Shown: positions 1 through 8,789, counted from the stretch's first letter. The stretch: 8,789 nucleotides of DNA from Vitrella brassicaformis CCMP3155 (GCA_001179505.1 CDMY01000949.1:1-8789); one strand, 5' to 3'. Numbers and translations: made by a program. The notes: generated by a model from the sequence alone, not told the origin.

Positions 1-1
1 G

Positions 2-355
2 CTGAGGGAGGTCGACAACAGAGTGAAGGCCTCCTTGTTGATCGTGCCGGCCACTATACTGTCTCGGGTCCTGCCCGCAGCATTCTACGTCATCTGCTTG
101 GCGGCCCTCGCGTGTGTCATTGCCGAGACGATGCTCTTCAACTGTTCGCTCATATCTGAGTGGCTTTTTCGTGACGTGACCAGGGGCAGCATCCTACACT
201 GTGCCCTTCCTATCTTCGTGTCCTTGCTGGCACTCACCTTTTCAGTCCAAGCCTTCTTCGCGACCTCCCTGTGGACCAAAAGTCTCGTCCGGCGCGTCCA
301 CAAGCGTCTGAGACGCGAAAGGGGTGGCGATGTGCCTGCGATTCTGTCTGTATAA
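2..355 (+). CDS. 3' end (5'-partial) of a multi-pass membrane protein gene, family not identified
   Basis: Frame is open from base 2 (LREVDNRVKASLL...) to TAA at 353-355. Third codon positions are strongly G/C. It has long hydrophobic segments (LLIVPATILSRVLPAAFYVICLAALACVIA; ILHCALPIFVSLLALTFSVQAFFATSLW) followed by a basic tail (RRVHKRLRR). TG-rich non-coding sequence follows the stop. Confidence 0.7.
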   Translation: MREVDNRVKASLLIVPATILSRVLPAAFYVICLAALACVIAETMLFNCSLISEWLFRDVTRGSILHCALPIFVSLLALTFSVQAFFATSLWTKSLVRRVHKRLRRERGGDVPAILSV

Positions 356-916: not shown

Positions 917-2597
917 TCATGTGTGCCCCTCACCATATGAAAGCCCTTGCTCATTCTCATCCAGCTGCCCCTCACCCAACACCCCCTCGCTGACACCCTC
1001 CGAGACGTGGGCCGCTATCATACGCTCCACACCCGTCATCAGCCTCTCTACATCGACACCACCTTCATGCTCCAACTCGTAGGTCTGCGCAGATGTCTGG
1101 ACAGACAAAAAGCGATGAGTACTGTCAGCAAAGGCTTCACAGCAAGTTTTTTCGCCTACCGAGCGTGGCCTGCCGTGTCTTTTCTTTTGTTTCGCATTTT
1201 TGTAAGCCGCATATAGCTCACGCCATCCACCAATGTGCTCATGCGTCTCAAGAACGTCATCTGTGCCAGTGACCGATTGCACAAAGCTCTTGTCTTCTTC
1301 TGAAAGACAGGACGACACACCCGAAAATGCTTGGTCACTATTGTGAAACCCACTTGCAACGTTGCGCCCGGATGGACTTCTGACTTTCGGGCTCCTTGTG
1401 CGCTTGCTGAGGTGGATATTCTCTTCGTACATGTTCTGGAACGTGACCAACTTGTCCACGACAAGCAGCAGTTTTGACTTTGAAATGAAGACACACATAT
1501 ACCCACACAAGCTGTGTGGACAAGAATGCGGGAGTGCGTGTACCGCGTCTCCACCTGTAGGTCGTGCAATGTCATGCCGCTCTTGGCACAGTCAGCCGCA
1601 GACCTTCATTCACCGAGGCAGCACCCAGCGACTGCACGTTGCTTCTCCAATGCATGTGACTCTGTGCTGACCTTTCAGAAGCCACGAAGGATTTGTCAGA
1701 CTCCGCGAGATCCCTTACCCAAACAGAGCCTCGCCTCGTTTCCATTGTGCTCTGCTGACACAGATGGCTGTACGAGCTTTGGATGACCGGGCGCTCCTGG
1801 ATGGCGACTGTGTTCACGGACGAGACCAGAGAGACACGCAATCCGATTTCTGCCAGCATTCTTCTCTCTCAGCTTACTAACCGTCCCACGGCTCATCGCG
1901 CCAAATTCTTTCGAATTCCCGTCGCTCAGTCTGAAAAGTAGGTCAACCATAGCAGTGTCACTCCATTCACTCCGCTTGTCTCACTTCCTTCTTCATGTAT
2001 GGAGAGTGGAGGACAAAGCAATAGGACCACAGGAAATCTAAGAAGTCCGGCGGGACCTGACACGATCGATCGAGATGCCGAGCTTTTGGATCACACAGAT
2101 TTTGTATCGGTCCCTCTGACCTCTTTGATTTGCAGCAGGTCGACGGCTTCTTGCATAGCCGCAGTCAACATCCGCATCACCAACTCACGCTTTCTTGCAA
2201 TCCACCACTCTTCGGCGCGTGATTTCGCGAAGCGGACGACGCCAGAGAGTCTGTCATGCTGCTTCTTGCCGTGAATGACAATCTCAGGTGATGAAGCAGT
2301 GTTGTGTGACATGTTGTCGGTGGCAGGCGGCTCCATCAGCGAGAATTTGCCGGTGTTCCAATCTAGCCACACCTTGCCGAGCCTCATGCGTCGTTGCTCC
2401 TCCCTCCCTGTGTGCCACTCCAACAGCTGTCTCTTGAGCCGGGATAAGCATAAGGCGATGGACTTGCAGTAAAGCACGGAGGAAGCAAGCACGGGGGCCT
2501 CTCGTAGGGAAAGTAGGGAAGAAAAGGCAGTCAATACAAAAATGGGCCTGAAGGTGAGGGCATCCTTGTTTTCAGCAACTTGTGAGAGGGCAGAGCG
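917..2597 (-). CDS. Exons 27-34: predicted cytoplasmic C-terminal tail (about 390 aa), no recognisable enzyme domain
   Basis: In-phase splicing gives ...ELVMRMLTAAMQEAVDLLQIKE|VPPDFLDFLWSYCFVLHSPYMKKE|TERREFERIWRDEPWD|VAIQERP...SDKSFVASER|SAADCAKSGMTLHDLQ|SKLLLVVDKLVTFQNMYEE...|KEDKSFVQ...RPRS|TSAQTYELEHEGG...GLSYGEGHT*. No kinase VAIK/HRD/DFG motifs. Two junctions use AAG acceptors and are less certain. Confidence 0.6.
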
Positions 2598-4455
2598 GAA
2601 GATAAGGGACAAGAGACTGAAGTAGTGATAGAGGTTGAGGAGCATGGCCAGCATCAACATCGAGACGTTGATGTACACTGCATCTCCGCCATTCACATCT
2701 CTGGGGGACAGTGCACGTGGCACATGCAAGGGCATGACAGAAGCCCTCAGGAACATAGTGCGTCTTGAGTGATCACCTGGCCTCATGAAGGATGACAGAC
2801 AGCAGCATGATTGACGCCAGCCAGATGATGAGACCTTGGCTTTCCATCCGATTGAGGAGGTTCATATGTCGGTGATCAAAAGGCGAGATGATCAGGTGGG
2901 CCGTGAGGCAGATAAATGCAACAATGGCCCAATAATGCAGCTGAAGATTTGGGTCGTTCACCACCATGTGCGAGATGAGCAGCACCAACACGCGCCTGCA
3001 TCCATCCAGTAGGAAAGGACGGTGATGACACAATAGAAGCGGTCTCCAGTGTTGACCTTAGAGCAAACACAGCGTCCTGTGCGCCAAGAGGCAGAGGAAG
3101 AAAGAATAGACAACAAGTTCAGTTTTTTCTTTCAAGTGTTTCTGACCCAGCAGGCGTACGCCCGTTTATATCCCTGTCCGCCAACAAACACGTATACAGA
3201 TATCTGCATCTCTTGCCATTCACTTACTCTGGCGCTAGAGGCAGACCCTTACCTGGTAGAAAAACCCAAACCTCTGCGGAAAGCAGAAGAAAAGAGATGC
3301 TTCTATATCGTGGTGTCTCTCTCATACCTTGCGCATTTTGGGGGAGTGCAGCTGGTTGTGGATACAGCACAGTAGCACCACGCCGATTATGACGGGCGAG
3401 AAGCTCTACAGTATGAGGCCTAAAACACCGATTCGGAAGAAATTGAGATGGAGGCCTTCCCTGCAACGAAGGTCCGGATTGACGTCGGGCCACGAAAGCA
3501 ACTTGTTGCTATCTCTAATTTTGTGCTCCCGACATCGCAGCAGCATCAGCATGTTCCTTGTGACCGTGGGATGCGTGAACGTCAGTATGATGATAAACAA
3601 TGCCGCCCGCTGGTCCGCGGCTGTTTTCATTCGAGCACAGCAGTCTCGTCTGTCGACGCGGGCCACATCGCGGGCCACGTCCAGGCCAACGTCGCGGGGC
3701 GTGTCGCGCGACTTGTCTCTGACTACATTACGAGCCGCATCGTCCTGTGACGATGACCGCCGCTCGACAGGTCGCCGTCGCCGTCTACAGCGCTGCAGGC
3801 GTTTGTGGCATCACAGGAAGATGGCGCCGATGGCTGGGATGACGATAAGGCAGACGAGCGGCACGGCAACCCAAGCGGCATGTCTCCACAGCACGGCATT
3901 GTCGTGGCGACCCCACCGGTCGATGATGCACTCCCTGAAACACATAAATCGCACACCCACATGTACACACAAAAGCGCCCGGACGCGTCACACAACACAC
4001 CAGGAGCCGTAGGCAAAGGGCATCCCTCCGTCCCAGGTGAAGAGGCGAGAAGTTGGCACGATGACCTTAGAGAGGTGCTTGACGTCGTAGGAAATCGATA
4101 GCACCAGCATGGCCAGCACACTTATCTGAAGAGAAAAGGCATTTGCAGATGCTCAGCTATGATGCATCCGCCTGCCTGCAACTATACCGATGTAAGATGG
4201 TTCAGGCCTAACTTGAAGAGTGCCTGTGGCAACAGGCAAACATACAGTAGTGACATACCAATACTAATGGAGAAATGGATTTACCGGAATCACGTCGTCG
4301 CGAGGTCTTGTCCCAGCTCTGCAGAAAAGGAGAAACCCAGATGGGCAAAGAGACGAATGTATGTACTTCTATGCCTGCACGCACCTTTCTGCAAGCCATG
4401 CGAGGCCGAAGATGGCCACGAGAGATGCGATTATCAAGAGAAAGGCGAACAGAAT
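2598..4455 (-). CDS. Exons 18-27: multipass membrane domain, about 9 predicted helices (two in-frame stops in exon 22)
   Basis: Hydrophobic segments seen by eye: ILFAFLLIIASLVAIFGLAWLA; LFKLGLNHLTSISVLAMLVLSISY; AAWVAVPLVCLIVIPAIGAIFL*; AALFIIILTFTHPTVTRNMLMLL; FFRIGVLGLIL*SFSPVIIGVVLLCC; AVFALRRVLVLLISHMVV; YWAIVAFICLTAHLIISPF; GLIIWLASIMLLSVIL; YINVSMLMLAMLLNLYHYFSLLSLIF. Motifs RFGFFYQGYKRAYACWDAVFALRR and PFDHRHMNLLNRME are typical of protist Cys-rich multipass / TRP-like membrane domains. Confidence 0.8.
3652..3720 (-). repeat. Imperfect 12-bp coding tandem repeat encoding RD-x-x tetrapeptides
   Basis: Encodes RDKS RDTP RDVG LDVA RDVA RVD. Plus-strand gcgggccac occurs at 3658-3666 and 3670-3678 (period 12). 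Confidence 0.75.
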
Positions 4456-5826
4456 GTTCCAGTGTACTTCACCGCAAGGATGACACGGCTGTGTCGGCCC
4501 TCTTCTCGCATATTCCTTCTCGCACAGGCCACATACGAATCCCCGGTACTTGGATCCTTTCTCTGACTGCAAACATGGCCACAAATATGAGCAAACTTGG
4601 CTTATATGTATCCCAACTTTACCAGGCATTTGGTCAGCCCTGTGTCTTCGTCCACGCCATCACATGCCTGCTTGAATGGACAGGGAATCACCACAGGAAG
4701 CGTCGTGTTTTTGGCAGCATATCTGCAAATGAACACATGTGGAAGCGTCAATTCCACATGCCATACATATTTCTACTAGGCGCTCCTCACGTTGTCATTC
4801 TGTCGTCGTAGGTTAGCAGGTAGAACCCCTTCTTTGTGGGCACAAGGGAGCGATTCTTTATGGGTTGCTCGCAGTCGAGGCCCTGCATATCCTCGATGCA
4901 CTTCTCGCATCTAAGTTTGCTGCTGTGCCTGCGAAAGAGACACAGACACACAACAACGAGACTTGCACGTCGCCTGCCAGCCGCGGCTTACTTGATGAAT
5001 CCATTTGTACAGTAACACAATTCCTTGTCTGTGCTGCCTTCTGGCGAGATTAAGTCGGCTCCACACTGTTCGCAAGTTGCCTTGCCGTTTTCAATTTTGC
5101 CGTACTGTCCTGTAGCAACACAAAGCACTATCTTGTTTTTGCTCCGTGGAACCAGATGAACAATCTACGGACATACCTGCAGGCCACTTCCGACATGTGT
5201 CCTTGTCTCTTTCATACCCTATCTCACAATTCTTCTGGCACATTTGGGAGGCGTTTTTGAAATGGTCCTCTTTGCAGTCACACTCTTGTTTTCCAGCTTG
5301 AGACGCTGAAGGTACACGAAAAACAGAAAACGTGCATGTCTCTTTGCCTCATTGGCGCCCTCACTCATTCCGTCTGCACATTCATGCCGCCATGCATTTC
5401 GTTTTCCCGCTCACTCTCTGTGTCTCGGCAGGGGTGGCACATGTGCGTGCCGGCATTGTGGTTTGAGTAAAAGCCAGCGGGGCACTCAGTGCAGTTGTCT
5501 CCAGCACCATCATAGCCAGGAATACATCGACAGAGCGCGGTCGGGTTGATGCTATGGTCAAGCTGTGAGCGCAGCAGATGACCCATTCAGGGGGAGGATC
5601 ACGTTATTCAATGCTCACCTGTACATCGTTCAATATACGGCAGACACTCGTGCACACTTGGCCATTTGAGACCCCGTTGTCGTCATCTGAGTCAGCAGGG
5701 AGACATGCAATGAATTCATGATGTCTCCTCCTCGCTTGCTATCTGCACACTTCGTTCAGGCCAATTTGGGTTCCGAACAAGCGCCTGAATCCCTCTGTCA
5801 CGCATAGCGGTCAGCTCAGCGCAGTC
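4456..5826 (-). CDS. Exons 11-18: cysteine-rich GCC2/GCC3 (TNFR/ephrin-receptor-like) repeats and juxtamembrane Cys module
   Basis: Spliced translation gives VCTSVCRILNDVQLDHSINPTALCRCIPGYDGAGDNCTECPAGFYS...CHPC...QECDCKEDHF...CRKWPAGQYG...CEQCGADLISPEGSTDKELCYCTNGFIK...CEKC...GLDC...KKGFY...VIPCPFKQAC...KCLSEKGSKYRGFVCGLCEKEYARRGPTQPCHPC. Confidence 0.85.
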
Positions 5827-5893
5827 CTGAGCGGCCAAGCCGTAAATCACAATGTCCGTCACTGTATCATGTGGTCACAAAGCTGTTGCTCAC

Positions 5894-8423
5894 CTTGATT
5901 TTCATTGTCGTGTTGACGAAGAGCCGCAGATTGGTGTTGTTCTTCAGATTCAAGTACGAGGGCCAATCGGAGGGAGAATCCGGCACATCGAATCGCTCCA
6001 AGCTATTGTTGCGCAGGTCAATGTCATGCGCCATTTTTTTCAGCGGTTCACCACTCGTGTCAACCGCCGTGATATGGTTGAAGGCGAGAGTGAGGATGCC
6101 AGTCGCTGAAATGTGACATAGGTGTTACCGTCCCAGGGCAATCAGCAATCGGTGTTGTCCTCCTTCAAGTTTAATAACTGTGATGCTACCTGAAAGAGCT
6201 TTGAAGCTGTCTTTGAAAGTTACATAGCCCTGCTTTGAGCAATACAGGGGACAAGAAATGTGCTGTGTTTGTGCGTGTGTGGGCGTGTCTTGAGCACTGC
6301 TTACTGCCGAGCCACTCCATTCCACGGGTCGGCTGTCGACCAGCTCTTGAACGTCATCTCTGTCGAAGTGATAGAGAACGGCGCAGGTCAAATTTCCCTT
6401 TAGCTGACACTCAGCGCAGCTGAGATTTGATAGGCTGCAAGGATAGGACAGAAGACAATGAGCCAATGCACTGGATCCACTCATGTGTCTCACTCACCTT
6501 GGCAGAGCCCGGAACCCTTGGAGAAAATCGGTGACGTCGATGTGCAGACTGTTGAAGCTCACGTCGAGCTCACGCAACACGGGCCAATCGGGCGGTTCCT
6601 TGGCAGACAACCACTCTTTGGCTTCAGACAACGTCGCTAAATAGAGCAACAGATATGAGTTAGAAAAAGACTACACGAGCAGGCTATTCGCTGTCTTACA
6701 GATCCGGTCATTAGCACAATATCCTTTGGCCGTTTCAAACCACTCTGGCCACGTGGATGCAGTGAAGCTGTTGTTGCTCAAAAGGAGCTTTTTAGCAGCA
6801 GGAAGATAATGCCAGCTTGCTGGGATAATGGCAAGGGCGTTGGTGTCAAAATTGATATCTTCCAGGCTGAACAATGTAAAAGTGAAAAAAGGTCAACGTG
6901 CGTCATTGTGTGTCTCCTTTTCTCTTGCTGACGTCTCGGGGAGGGATCCGTTGCCGGTGAAGCCCTCAATGCGATTGCAACTCAGGTCTACCATTCTGAG
7001 TCTCTTGATAGGGGACAGGGATGGCAGCGTGCCGGTCATATTGTTGTTGCTTAAGGAGAGTGTCGTTAGGCTTGTCCACTCATCGAGCGAGGATGGGAGG
7101 GCTGCCAGACTGCCCGATACAGAGATCAAAGCACATAAGCAGTGTGTCCTTCGGTCGACGGAAAGACCGTACTTGTTGTTGTCAGCGACAAGCTCTTTCA
7201 GTTCTGCGCATTCCGCCAGCCCATCAGGGACTGGTCCATTAAACTGTTGGCAAGCAATGTCAGACACAGAAATTAAAGTAATTTCTTTGCCCTGGTCCTG
7301 CTTTGATTCTAGACCTTGTTATGGCTCAAATGAACTTTCTTTAGCTGTGGAGGCAATCCGAGGGCGTCCAAGGTCCCCGATAGCTTGTTCCACTCCAAAT
7401 ACAACTCCCTCAGTTGCAAAAAGTTGCCCCACTGCTCAGGAATGGTGCCATTGAGGTTGTTGTATCAGGTGCTCTAGGTTGGTCAGCAAGCCCCACTCCG
7501 GAGGAAGGCCGCCGGAGAAGCCCTCATCCGCCTTTTTGGCTGTGAAGGTCGATGCGACGTATGTTTTTTGCCTTGCTGAGAGATGCGGGGAGAGACCCTG
7601 ACAGCTGCAAGCCAAAGAGCACATCGCCTTTTGCTCTCCACATTCGTGTCTCTCTTTGCTTTACGCGTTTCTTGACTTGCCTGATTTTCTTGGAGCTCTA
7701 ACTCCTCGAGATCGGGCCAGTTTGAGCCAAAGCCGTCAGGCAGGCTGCCATATAGAGAATTGCTCTGGAGTCTGAGATGTCTTAAGCGAGTTAGATTTCT
7801 GAGAAACATCGGGATAGGCCCAGAGAGGTTGTTCCGCTGCAGATCAAGGGTCTTGAGATGGTGAAGCTCTCCCAAAGAGTCCGGTATGCGACCGCTCAGA
7901 CTGACATTCTCGAGCACAAGCGACGTCAGATTGTGCCCGAGGGTGGAAGGGATGCTGCCAAGGTGCAAATCGGCCGGCTCGAGCGTCAGGTACTTGATTT
8001 GCATCAGGTTGGCGACGGAGAACGGTCCATTAAGCGCTGCATCGGTGATACCGAGCAGCTCGAGGGAGGGAAGATTCAGATTAGGCAATTGCCCCGAGAA
8101 GCTCAAAGATTTCTGTGACGAGCCGATGATGTCGAGCGCTTTGAGAGAAGTCAGGTTGTTGATGGATTTGAGGATTGTTCCATTCATAATTGTCCCCCTG
8201 ATGTAGAGCAGGCGTAGAGACGTCATGTTGCCAACTTCGTCCATCAGATGGCCCTCGAAAGGCACGCTGGAAATCCACAGACCGAGGATGTGCTTCAGCT
8301 CATAAATGTCCCGCGGGAAATCTACCGTCGTCCTCAGGTTCTCCCGCAACTCTGTCACTTCAAATCCATCCTCACGGTTGCCCCACAGTAGCTGCGAGGA
8401 ATCGATCAACAAACAACCACATG

Positions 8424-8460
<37 letters not shown>

Positions 8461-8789
8461 CGAGCGACGCTGTGCGTTCGCGCGCGCGTGTGTGTGTGTG
8501 ACACTGCGTGTGCGTGTGGGTTGCTGACCAGCAGATACCCCTCAGCCCCGTCAGGCAGGCGGATGCACACAATGAACGAGGCATTACAGAAGTCCACCGC
8601 AAAGGCGCTCCTGTCAGTCTTGTTGACGAGACTAATCTTCGCTAGCAACCTGCTGAGTGCATCAGCATCCGCCTGGCAAGGACCACACTCAGAGGTTGAG
8701 AGGTCCTCCATTTCGTCCAGTGGCAGGATGAGTGAGGTGCGGGATGAATTGCCCGTTGCGGTGACCGTGGGCCGGAAGACCACTAAACC
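5894..8789 (-). CDS. Exons 1-10: LRR N-cap and about 20 extracellular plant-type leucine-rich repeats (frameshifted in exon 3)
   Basis: N-cap-like [12 protein letters not shown]...[10 protein letters not shown]. Repeats match LxxLxxLxLxxNxLSGxIPxxL, e.g. [109 protein letters not shown]. Many N-x-S/T sequons. Confidence 0.9.
7605..7680 (-). other. Non-canonical GC-AG intron (76 bp)
   Basis: Donor CAG|GCAAGT at 7680 and acceptor TTGCAG|CTG at 7605. Removal joins LQENQ to LSGSLPASL in exact LRR register. No GT donor fits. Confidence 0.85.
8426..8500. repeat. Compound microsatellite (GA)16 ... (CG)5(TG)6 in intron 8392-8528
   Basis: GA x16 at 8426-8457, CG x5 at 8479-8488, TG x6 at 8489-8500, read directly from the sequence. 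Confidence 0.95.

What the first reader, a model, noticed from the sequence alone, without database searches (positions are those of the whole stretch)
917..8789. Kinase-less giant receptor combining a plant-type LRR solenoid with a CRMP-like Cys-repeat / 9-TM body
Seen: splicing yields N-cap, about 20 LRRs with the plant-style NxLSGxIP consensus, CxxCPxGxY repeats, YxGxxCxxC, about 9 TM helices and a long tail. Established: plant LRR receptor kinases and receptor-like proteins have one TM. Apicomplexan and ciliate cysteine repeat modular proteins (CRMPs) combine Cys repeats with a multipass domain and act in rhoptry/mucocyst exocytosis. Inference: this is a member of a little-characterised protist surface-sensor family in which a variable LRR ectodomain is fused to a CRMP/TRP-like membrane core, possibly sensing prey, host or pathogen.
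Basis: partly seen in the sequence, partly recalled or inferred. Interest (0 to 1): 0.75.

Follow-up and report, generated by a model that had tools for sequence, protein, structure and literature searches.

The report
Broken copy of LRR-headed CRMP receptor
This is a damaged duplicate of an alga's gene whose protein carries plant-like binding repeats on the membrane body that malaria and Toxoplasma parasites need to trigger invasion; the family is already known, so it is a modest addition.

Summary
In order it has an N-cap, about 20-24 plant-type LRRs, ephrin-receptor-like Cys repeats, a YxGxxCxxC module, about 9 hydrophobic helices and a kinase-less tail.

The CRMP reading is supported:
- A profile of the TM core hits Plasmodium CRMP2 (E 1.9e-29), P. 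berghei CRMP1 and a Neospora CRMPa-like protein.
- An HMM built only from apicomplexan CRMPs hits three window exons in order (E 7e-12, 8e-5, 1e-4).
- hhalign gives 99.8 % probability.

The genome is Vitrella brassicaformis. Annotated Vitrella proteins such as CEM14970.1 carry the same LRR-to-TM order in one gene.

Three points limit the finding:
- This copy is broken. It has two frameshift deletions (-2, -8 nt) in an LRR exon, two Trp-to-stop codons in the TM region and a lost CxxC cysteine. Exon 1 is cut off by the contig end. A 93 % identical copy on contig C738 is open at all four lesions.
- It sits in a Vitrella-specific clade, not with the parasite CRMPs in the tree.
- "TRP-like" holds only as borderline Pfam PF06011 matches in paralogues. 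Predicted folds match no solved TRP channel or GPCR.

CRMP expansion in the related alga Chromera is already published. This scan has met LRR- and flytrap-headed CRMPs on other DNA of the same genome.

The parts
8526..8789 (-). N-terminal cap exon, Cys-containing. It is cut by the contig end, so the start codon and signal peptide are absent. The block is conserved with paralogues and its 3' boundary is approximate.
   Evidence: Open frame 8409-8789. tblastx shows 64-69 % identity to C947, C487 and C508. C738 continues 376 nt further upstream, where a hydrophobic stretch beginning with Met-Met lies in a conserved block. No Pfam hit.
7681..8391 (-). Large LRR exon of 711 nt (237 codons), about 9 repeats, several with the N-x-L-S-G-x-I-P signature.
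   Evidence: Pfam LRR_14 6.6e-13, LRR_1, LRR_8 and LRR_4. The best solved-structure hits are all plant LRR receptors. The acceptor lies just upstream of 8391 and a GC donor sits at 7680.
7605..7680 (-). 76-nt GC-AG intron that splits one LRR.
   Evidence: Sequence read. The same GCAAGT donor is present in C738.
7315..7604 (-). LRR exon carrying two frameshifting deletions: -2 nt at about 7535/7534 and -8 nt at 7467/7466. It is 290 nt here and 300 nt in C738.
   Evidence: Pairwise alignment with C738. C947, C487 and C508 keep one frame across the 7466 junction. Coordinates.
5893..7243 (-). Further LRR and C-terminal-flank exons. Conserved blocks lie at 7243-6932, 6868-6707, 6658-6443, 6439-6185 and 6112-5893, with introns between them. 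Boundaries are approximate.
   Evidence: Pfam LRR_4 1.2e-8 and LRR_8. tblastx blocks.
5398..5571 (-). Ephrin-receptor-like (GCC2_GCC3-type) Cys-repeat exon.
   Evidence: PF07699 E 3.9e-5, 23.8 bits against cut-off 23.1.
4614..5315 (-). Four more Cys-rich exons: 5315-5175, about 5131-4991, 4954-4814 and 4757-4614. The codon at 5186-5184 is TGG (Trp) where C738 has Cys in a CxxCPxGxY motif.
   Evidence: No Pfam hit above threshold.
4372..4548 (-). Membrane-proximal YxGxxCxxC module (DUF7630-like) plus TM1 (4479-4378).
   Evidence: The apicomplexan-CRMP-only HMM matches it at E 9.8e-5, HMM positions 82-150. Hydropathy. Pfam DUF7630 not detected at E<=0.1.
3814..4152 (-). TM2 (4152-4081) and TM3 (3897-3814) exons.
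3811..3813 (-). Premature TGA where C738 has Trp.
3330..3645 (-). Exon with TM4 (3621-3559) and TM5 (3456-3346).
   Evidence: The apicomplexan-CRMP HMM matches it at E 7.7e-5, HMM positions 319-393. Alignment A1. Hydropathy.
3406..3408 (-). Premature TAG inside TM5. It replaces a Trp kept in every paralogue aligned there, at what I take, by comparing consensus strings, to be the invariant Trp of the aligned CRMPs.
   Evidence: Paralogue alignment. List of invariant residues.
3057..3273 (-). Three mini-exons: 3273-3253, 3173-3147 and 3076-3057. Together they encode the family's GF(L/F)Y-x-GY...YW(D/E)-x-V...R motif.
   Evidence: Sequence with GT/AG sites. The annotated paralogue P0005 uses the first and third mini-exons. 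The intronless paralogues have the motif uninterrupted.
2777..2995 (-). Exon with TM6 to TM8. This is the best-conserved part of the CRMP core.
   Evidence: The apicomplexan-CRMP HMM matches it at E 7.2e-12, HMM positions 443-517. At least 41 paralogous matches in the genome.
2701..2776 (-). 76-nt GT-AG intron that restores the frame. It is not a lesion.
   Evidence: Sequence.
2571..2700 (-). Exon with TM9 (2687-2598).
917..2570 (-). Post-TM region and cytosolic tail. Conserved blocks lie at 2426-2220, 2062-1979, 1727-1632, 1605-1555 and 1483-920, and the stop codon is at 919-917. No kinase or other known domain.
   Evidence: No Pfam hit. Collinear with P0015 and the paralogues.

Best explanation
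The window is a whole 8.8-kb contig of Vitrella brassicaformis. It holds a recently duplicated and now disabled copy of a gene for an LRR-headed, CRMP-type multipass receptor.

Intact relatives are the 93 % identical gene on contig C738 and annotated proteins such as CEM14970.1 and CEL99184.1. Their predicted layout is:
- a signal peptide;
- an extracellular plant-type LRR solenoid;
- a stalk of ephrin-receptor-like Cys repeats ending in a YxGxxCxxC (DUF7630-like) module;
- the roughly nine-helix CRMP membrane core;
- a cytosolic tail without a catalytic domain.

Shown: homology of the core to the apicomplexan CRMPs, the domain order, the lesions, and placement in a Vitrella-specific clade.

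Inferred from Toxoplasma and Tetrahymena CRMPs (PMC9670195, PMC9815656): the head faces outward and the tail faces the cytosol. The intact proteins would then act as ligand sensors, possibly paired through their membrane cores, that license regulated exocytosis or another membrane signal.

The copy in this window most likely makes no functional protein. It looks like a casualty of birth-and-death turnover in a large receptor family.
For: CRMP homology:
- The profile of the TM core gave 1094 hits at E<=1e-3, including Plasmodium CRMP2 at 1.9e-29, a Neospora Kringle/MAR protein at 9.4e-23 and PbCRMP1 at 2.2e-18.
- BLASTP of CRMP2 against Vitrella LRR proteins gave 1e-33 to 1e-39.
- An HMM from 10 apicomplexan CRMPs hits window pieces 4372-4659, 3409-3810 and 2776-3057 in order.
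- hhalign gave 99.8 % probability.

Head and stalk: Pfam LRR and Ephrin_rec_like hits, and plant LRR receptors as the best solved relatives.

One gene: collinear at C738, C947 and C487 and in annotated single proteins with LRR, Ephrin_rec_like and a TM core.

Lesions: a -2 nt and a -8 nt deletion, two stop codons and a Cys-to-Trp change. C738 is open at all of them.

Divergence from C738: coding identity 95.8 %, non-coding 91.6 %, dS 0.09, dN/dS 0.32. The duplicate was under constraint for part of its history.

Clade: the Vitrella LRR proteins group together (SH-aLRT 99), apart from the apicomplexan clade (99).
Against: - No transcript or read data were available, so the four lesions could in principle be assembly errors on a small contig.
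- dN/dS of 0.32 is not what a long-dead pseudogene would show.
- The C738 copy itself has an earlier stop in its tail, so 'intact' is relative.
- The exocytosis or sensor role is transferred from distant relatives in another clade, and no chromerid CRMP has been tested.
- Pfam DUF7630 and DUF7631, which are present in nearly all apicomplexan CRMPs, are not detected in the window's exons.
Confidence: 0.8

Rival explanations
1. The gene is functional, and the frameshifts and stops are sequencing or assembly errors, or are bypassed by alternative splicing. On this view the window encodes a working LRR-CRMP receptor.
For: dN/dS against C738 is 0.32, with coding sequence more conserved than non-coding. 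Nearly all other exons are open and splice sites are kept. The contig is short and may be poorly assembled.
Against: There are four independent disabling changes. They include an 8-nt deletion and two point nonsense codons at conserved Trp positions, plus the loss of a motif cysteine. That pattern is unlike typical base-calling error. The stops lie in the middle of conserved TM exons, which cannot be skipped without losing helices.
Confidence: 0.15
2. The LRR part and the Cys-repeat/TM part are two neighbouring genes: a secreted LRR protein followed by a CRMP-like membrane protein.
For: No transcript evidence was available for this locus. Some annotated Vitrella models, such as P0005 (803 aa), start at the Cys repeats.
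Against: The same order and strand, with short gaps, recur at C738, C947 and C487. Annotated proteins P0001, P0007, P0008, P0023 and P0029 hold LRRs together with a weak DUF7630 and/or TRP-type TM-core match in one chain. All of these except P0001 also carry Ephrin_rec_like repeats. No stop-plus-promoter-sized gap separates the last LRR exon from the first Cys exon.
Confidence: 0.03
3. The membrane body is a true TRP-type cation channel or a GPCR, so the protein is a ligand-gated channel or GPCR rather than 'CRMP-like'.
For: Pfam PF06011 'TRP' matches at least 8 paralogues above its cut-off (best 32.1 bits) and several annotated relatives weakly. PANTHER calls TgCRMPa GPCR-like (PMC9670195).
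Against: PF06011 models fungal Flc/Pkd2-type proteins, not the six-helix TRP channel fold. The window's exons and 12 CRMP-clade proteins (11 apicomplexan plus one Chromera) do not match it. AlphaFold models with pLDDT above 90 in the core find no TRP channel and no convincing GPCR. Foldseek finds nothing at E<=0.001, and the best VIA Z scores of 8.4-8.7 are to generic helix bundles.
Confidence: 0.02

Closest known systems
Apicomplexan cysteine repeat modular proteins (Plasmodium CRMP1-4, Toxoplasma CRMPa/CRMPb)
   Same: Ephrin-receptor-like Cys repeats are followed by a membrane-proximal Cys module and a nine-helix core. The conserved motifs are shared (LL-x-C, W-x-x-G-x-P, GFL-x-GY, YWE/D, PFD-x-R, L-x-R-x-E). 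Sequence homology is strong. There is a long tail with no catalytic domain.
   Different: The head is a plant-type LRR solenoid instead of Kringle, MAR or parasite-specific DUF modules. DUF7631 is absent and DUF7630 is only weakly recognisable. The window's family falls in a Vitrella-only clade, not inside the apicomplexan clade. The function is untested, and this copy is broken.
Annotated Vitrella brassicaformis paralogues (CEM14970.1 = P0007, CEL99184.1 = P0008, CEL98070.1 = P0001) and the C738 twin
   Same: The domain order is the same from N-cap to tail. C738 is 93 % identical in DNA.
   Different: Those copies are open where the window carries two frameshifts and two stops. P0007 and P0008 are only about 25-45 % identical in protein.
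Plant LRR receptor-like proteins and kinases (GSO1, FLS2, PEPR1, MIK2)
   Same: The LRR class is the same, with 24-residue repeats carrying the L-S-G-x-I-P signature. They are the best solved relatives of the LRR exon, at E down to 1.7e-79.
   Different: Plant receptors have one TM helix and usually a kinase. Here there are about nine helices and no kinase. The resemblance is confined to the repeat type.
Fungal Flc/Pkd2-type 'TRP' domain proteins (Pfam PF06011)
   Same: Paralogues match positions 233-400 of the 426-position model, some above the curated cut-off. UniProt names several Vitrella relatives 'TRP C-terminal domain-containing'.
   Different: The window's own exons and the 12 CRMP-clade proteins tested (11 apicomplexan plus one Chromera) do not reach the model. 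No ML-like N-terminal domain was seen. The link is borderline and rests on intermediates.
Coral protein LOC111331582 (Stylophora pistillata, P0208)
   Same: It has the same order in a 917-aa protein: LRR_8/LRR_5, then Ephrin_rec_like, then DUF7630, then a multipass core with a weak PF06011 match. It hits the family profile at E 3.1e-8.
   Different: It is much shorter and its LRRs match other Pfam LRR models. Whether the fusion is shared or independent was not tested, and contamination was not excluded.

Membership tests
CRMP (cysteine repeat modular protein) family | Extracellular ephrin-receptor-like / EGF-like cysteine repeats | tested here: met
   PF07699 hits window 5368-5586 at E 3.9e-5, above the cut-off. 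All 12 CRMP-clade proteins tested (11 apicomplexan plus one Chromera) carry it.
CRMP (cysteine repeat modular protein) family | Multipass (about 9 TM) core homologous to that of Plasmodium and Toxoplasma CRMPs | tested here: met
   Profile against Plasmodium CRMP2 1.9e-29. An apicomplexan-only HMM hits three window exons collinearly at 7e-12, 8e-5 and 1e-4. hhalign gives 99.8 %. Nine hydrophobic segments.
CRMP (cysteine repeat modular protein) family | Membrane-proximal DUF7630 (PF24633), present in all 12 CRMP-clade proteins tested | tested here: inconclusive
   No Pfam hit in window 4372-4659 at E<=0.1. That exon matches the corresponding part of the apicomplexan HMM at E 1e-4. Relatives score 17.6-26 bits against a cut-off of 27, and P0029 scores 54.8 bits.
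CRMP (cysteine repeat modular protein) family | DUF7631 (PF24634), present in 11 of the 12 CRMP-clade proteins tested | tested here: not met
   Absent from the window's exon pieces at E<=0.1 and from the Vitrella LRR relatives at the stricter cut-offs used for them (E<=0.01 or 0.001).
CRMP (cysteine repeat modular protein) family | Orthology to the CRMPA or CRMPB clade | tested here: not met
   In the TM-core tree the apicomplexan sequences form one clade (SH-aLRT 99). The Vitrella LRR proteins form a separate one (99). CRMPB-type sequences were not identified among the rows.
CRMP (cysteine repeat modular protein) family | Role in regulated exocytosis (rhoptries, mucocysts), with the N-terminus outside and the C-terminus in the cytosol | not testable with these tools
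   Known only from experiments in Toxoplasma and Tetrahymena (PMC9670195, PMC9815656).
Pfam PF06011 'TRP' (fungal Flc/Pkd2-type) | Match to the family model above its curated cut-off (28.5 bits) | tested here: inconclusive
   No hit in the window's exons. Eight or more paralogous loci score 28.6-32.1 bits. Annotated relatives score 18.8-27.8 bits. None of the 12 CRMP-clade proteins tested hits at E<=1.
Canonical TRP cation channels / 7TM GPCRs | Six-helix pore-forming fold, or seven-helix receptor fold | tested here: not met
   Tested on models of paralogues P0012 and the L048 open frame, which have pLDDT above 90 in the core. Foldseek finds no hit at E<=0.001. The best VIA Z scores of 8.4-8.7 are to unrelated helix bundles. 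The window's own spliced protein was not folded.
Plant LRR receptor kinases / receptor-like proteins | Plant-specific 24-residue LRR ectodomain | tested here: met
   All of the best 60 solved-structure hits shown, of 157 in all, are plant LRR receptor-type ectodomains. Pfam LRR hits.
Plant LRR receptor kinases / receptor-like proteins | Single TM helix, with or without a cytoplasmic kinase | tested here: not met
   About nine hydrophobic helices and no kinase or other Pfam domain in the tail.

The most novel reading that the evidence does not exclude
Chromerid algae may maintain a fast-turning, birth-and-death repertoire of CRMP receptors with interchangeable heads: plant-type LRRs, Venus-flytrap domains, or both. 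These would couple recognition of outside ligands to regulated exocytosis, which would make them a free-living forerunner of the parasites' invasion trigger.

The same nine-helix body may also belong to one superfamily with the fungal Flc/Pkd2 'TRP' domain (PF06011). The chromerid sequences would be the bridge between the two. That would point to an ion- or solute-conducting role for CRMP cores.
Probability: 0.3. Interest if true: 0.6.

Novelty: new member of a known kind. Interest (0 to 1): 0.3.

Why it matters
CRMPs are essential for rhoptry discharge and host-cell invasion in Toxoplasma. How they sense and signal is unknown, and no solved structure of a homologue turned up in these searches.

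Free-living relatives that put well-understood ligand-binding heads on the same core offer tractable material. The heads seen so far are plant-type LRRs, and in other paralogues ANF/flytrap domains. Such proteins could be used to ask what a CRMP core does after ligand binding.

This particular locus adds little beyond that. It is a broken duplicate whose main value is to document recent turnover in the family. The borderline PF06011 link is the one lead that might change how CRMP cores are thought about.

Tried and rejected
- Pfam on the TM and tail exon pieces alone gave nothing. The signal only appeared with paralogues and profiles.
- The word-based protein search with P0007's TM region found only 3 proteins, so it was too insensitive for this family.
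- The long 'open frames' at C291 and C262 turned out to be runs of N and were dropped as folding targets.
- A home-made single-repeat LRR HMM was too weak to survey the hits. phmmer with the whole LRR exon replaced it.
- I first suspected frameshifts at about 3017, 2776-2861, 5893, 5141 and 3325. Each turned out to lie in an intron or at a splice site, so they were rejected as lesions.
- Foldseek and VIA searches of two models against solved structures gave only weak Eph-receptor Cys-rich hits (E 0.04) and generic helix bundles.
Coordinates were derived by reference instead.
- The spliced exons were never joined for any search or fold. Exons were searched one by one by reference, and paralogues stood in for the whole protein.


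Full report
**What is in the window.** The window is the whole of contig C949 of a 72.7-Mb, 1064-contig assembly. All coding signal for the finding lies on the minus strand, in many short exons.

**How the spliced gene was handled.** Each exon piece was searched by reference. Intact paralogues or public Vitrella proteins stood in wherever a continuous sequence was needed.

**Checking the observation.**
- LRRs: Pfam finds LRR_1/4/8/14 in pieces 7486-8541, 7312-7464, 6896-7318 and 6674-6892.
- Cys repeats: Ephrin_rec_like (PF07699) hits 5368-5586 at E 3.9e-5, just above its cut-off.
- LRR class: the 250-aa LRR exon finds only plant LRR receptor ectodomains among its best 60 solved relatives shown (GSO1 1.7e-79, FLS2 9e-68, PEPR1 2.4e-62), so 'plant-type' is right for the repeat class.
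- LRR number: reading the translations gives about 20-24 repeats.
- Membrane region: nine hydrophobic segments lie between 4479 and 2598, and two weaker ones follow.
- Tail: no Pfam domain and no kinase. The gene's stop codon is at 919-917.
- One gene: the order N-cap, LRRs, Cys repeats, TM region, tail is collinear at C738, C947 and C487. It also holds inside the annotated single proteins P0007 (CEM14970.1, 1841 aa) and P0008 (CEL99184.1, 2192 aa). That argues for one gene, although I had no transcript data for this locus.

**The copy is broken.** A region of contig C738 (87,008-95,021) is about 93 % identical to the window. Aligning the two copies and checking against the more distant paralogues shows five changes in the window:
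- The LRR exon 7604-7315 is 290 nt here and 300 nt in C738. The window lacks 2 nt at about 7535/7534 and 8 nt at 7467/7466. C738 reads straight through in one frame, and C947, C487 and C508 keep one frame across the 7466 junction.
- TGA at 3813-3811 replaces a Trp just after TM3.
- TAG at 3408-3406 replaces the Trp of the W-x-F-x-P motif in TM5. All aligned paralogues keep this Trp. By consensus comparison it appears to be the invariant Trp of the 12 aligned CRMPs.
- The codon at 5186-5184 is Trp where C738 has the second Cys of a CxxCPxGxY motif.
- The contig ends inside the N-cap exon. C738 continues 376 nt further, where a hydrophobic stretch beginning with Met-Met lies in a conserved block.

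Several other apparent frame breaks turned out to be introns. They are a 76-nt GT-AG intron at 2776-2701, a 76-nt GC-AG intron at 7680-7605, and the introns around three mini-exons (3273-3253, 3173-3147, 3076-3057) that together spell the family's GF(L/F)Y-GY-YW(D/E) motif.

Over 4,071 aligned coding bases the two copies are 95.8 % identical, against 91.6 % outside those blocks. dS is 0.09 and dN/dS is 0.32. The duplicate was therefore constrained for part of its history, and the disabling hits are probably recent. C738 is not perfect either, since its tail stops about 75 codons earlier than the window's.

**Is the membrane body CRMP-like?** Yes, by four lines of evidence.
- The TM exon 2776-3057 has at least 41 paralogous matches in the genome, many in long intron-free frames.
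- A profile of the window's TM exons plus these paralogues (A1) was scored against 1.84 billion proteins. It gave 1094 hits at E<=1e-3 and 152 at E<=1e-10.
- The named hits span several groups:
  - Plasmodium vinckei CRMP2 (1.9e-29), with P. berghei CRMP2 in its cluster;
  - P. berghei CRMP1 (2.2e-18) and P. vivax CRMP1;
  - a Neospora Kringle/MAR protein with the TgCRMPa architecture (9.4e-23);
  - Theileria and Babesia proteins;
  - Chromera, Perkinsus and an oomycete.
- BLASTP of CRMP2 against the Vitrella LRR proteins gives 1e-33 to 1e-39 over 740-880 residues. The alignment runs from the last Cys repeats through the helices.
- An HMM built from ten apicomplexan CRMP cores alone hits the window's own exon pieces, on the right strand and in the right order. 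Piece 4372-4659 matches at E 9.8e-5, 3409-3810 at 7.7e-5 and 2776-3057 at 7.2e-12.
- hhalign of A1 against an alignment of 11 apicomplexan CRMPs plus one Chromera relative gives 99.8 % probability, E 8.8e-28, over 225 columns.

Two qualifications apply:
- Pfam's CRMP-derived modules DUF7630 and DUF7631 are present in 12 and 11 of those 12 CRMP-clade proteins. Neither is detected in the window's exons. DUF7630 is sub-threshold in most Vitrella LRR relatives but clear in P0029 at 54.8 bits.
- In a tree of 115 TM cores the apicomplexan proteins form one clade and the Vitrella LRR proteins another, each with SH-aLRT 99. The window's gene is therefore a lineage-specific CRMP-family paralogue, not an orthologue of the invasion CRMPs.

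**Is it TRP-like?** Only in a narrow sense.
- Pfam PF06011 is named 'TRP' but models fungal Flc/Pkd2-type proteins. It matches positions 233-400 of the model in at least eight paralogous loci above its cut-off (best 32.1 bits). It matches several annotated relatives more weakly.
- UniProt calls some of these proteins 'TRP C-terminal domain-containing'.
- The window's exons and the 12 CRMP-clade proteins (11 apicomplexan plus one Chromera) do not reach the model.
- AlphaFold models of two paralogues have pLDDT above 90 across the helices. They are P0012 (1029 aa) and the 492-aa L048 open frame.
- Foldseek finds nothing for them at E<=0.001 among solved structures. The best VIA-align Z scores (8.4-8.7) are to unrelated helix bundles.
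- There is no TRP-channel or GPCR fold. This agrees with the statement in PMC9815656 that no CRMP homologue has been solved.

**Where else LRR heads sit on this core.** Among the 150 best representatives, phmmer with the window's LRR exon picks out only Vitrella proteins (P0001, 2, 7, 8, 11, 13, 23, 29) and two Chromera proteins. P0029 and both Chromera proteins also carry an ANF-receptor (flytrap) domain.

A later search turned up a coral RefSeq protein, Stylophora LOC111331582. It has LRR_8/LRR_5, Ephrin_rec_like, DUF7630 and a matching core. The architecture is therefore not strictly chromerid-specific. I did not test whether the coral fusion is shared or independent, or whether the record is contaminated.

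**What is already known.** PMC9815656 states that Chromera has 'many diverse CRMPs' and 'a highly expanded repertoire'. Its domain key lists an LRR-fold SCOP class (d1ds9a_) among the domains seen in CRMPs. The chromerid genome paper does not discuss these proteins. I found no text describing LRR-CRMPs in Vitrella, but the proteins are in public databases.

This scan has already reported CRMP cores with flytrap heads and with flytrap-plus-LRR heads on other pieces of this genome. It has also logged several first-reader notes of LRR-CRMP hybrids.

**Mechanism.** For the intact relatives I infer an outward-facing LRR ligand-binding head on a Cys-rich stalk, a nine-helix core that may pair with another CRMP core, and a cytosolic tail. 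Together these would couple ligand binding to regulated exocytosis or another membrane signal. The inference comes from the topology and the exocytosis phenotypes of Toxoplasma and Tetrahymena CRMPs (PMC9670195, PMC9815656). None of it is shown for chromerids. For the window's copy the best reading is that it makes no working protein.

**Verdict.** The locus itself is a decayed duplicate in a family whose expansion in the related chromerid Chromera is already noted. Interest is modest.

Noticed in passing
window 23-355 (+): A hydrophobic 110-aa open frame on the other strand. It is 71 % identical in protein to part of a 738-aa open frame at C738:51975-52268. At the DNA level window 1-312 is 84 % identical to C738 at about 97,815-98,124. 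In C738 that segment lies upstream of the twin gene, but in the window it lies downstream of the gene's 3' end. The duplication therefore came with a rearrangement.
   Followed up: partly
window about 8409-8500: The intron after the N-cap exon is a dinucleotide microsatellite of GA/CT and CA/GT runs. It differs from C738 by 10- and 18-nt indels.
   Followed up: no
window 7605-7680: An intron with a GC donor (GCAAGT) rather than GT. It is conserved in the C738 copy and splits one LRR exactly between N-Q and L-S-G.
   Followed up: partly
P0005 (CEM18772.1, gene on C508 near 65.8-66.7 kb; loci L034/L017): The public gene model appears to skip the exon encoding TM5 and the GYK-x-x-YAYW mini-exon. 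Both are present and conserved in the DNA, so this annotated protein is probably mis-spliced.
   Followed up: partly
P0208, Stylophora pistillata LOC111331582: A coral RefSeq protein of 917 aa has LRRs, Ephrin_rec_like, DUF7630 and a CRMP-type multipass core. It could be a true cnidarian member of the family or sequence from a coral-associated alveolate.
   Followed up: partly
L053 (C291:124001-131000) and L054 (C262:31001-38500): Tandem intron-free CRMP-core paralogues are interrupted by assembly gaps (runs of N). This suggests the family sits in repeat-rich, poorly assembled arrays.
   Followed up: no
C738 equivalent of window about 1140: The otherwise open C738 twin has a stop about 75 codons before the window's stop, so its cytosolic tail is shorter.
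   Followed up: no
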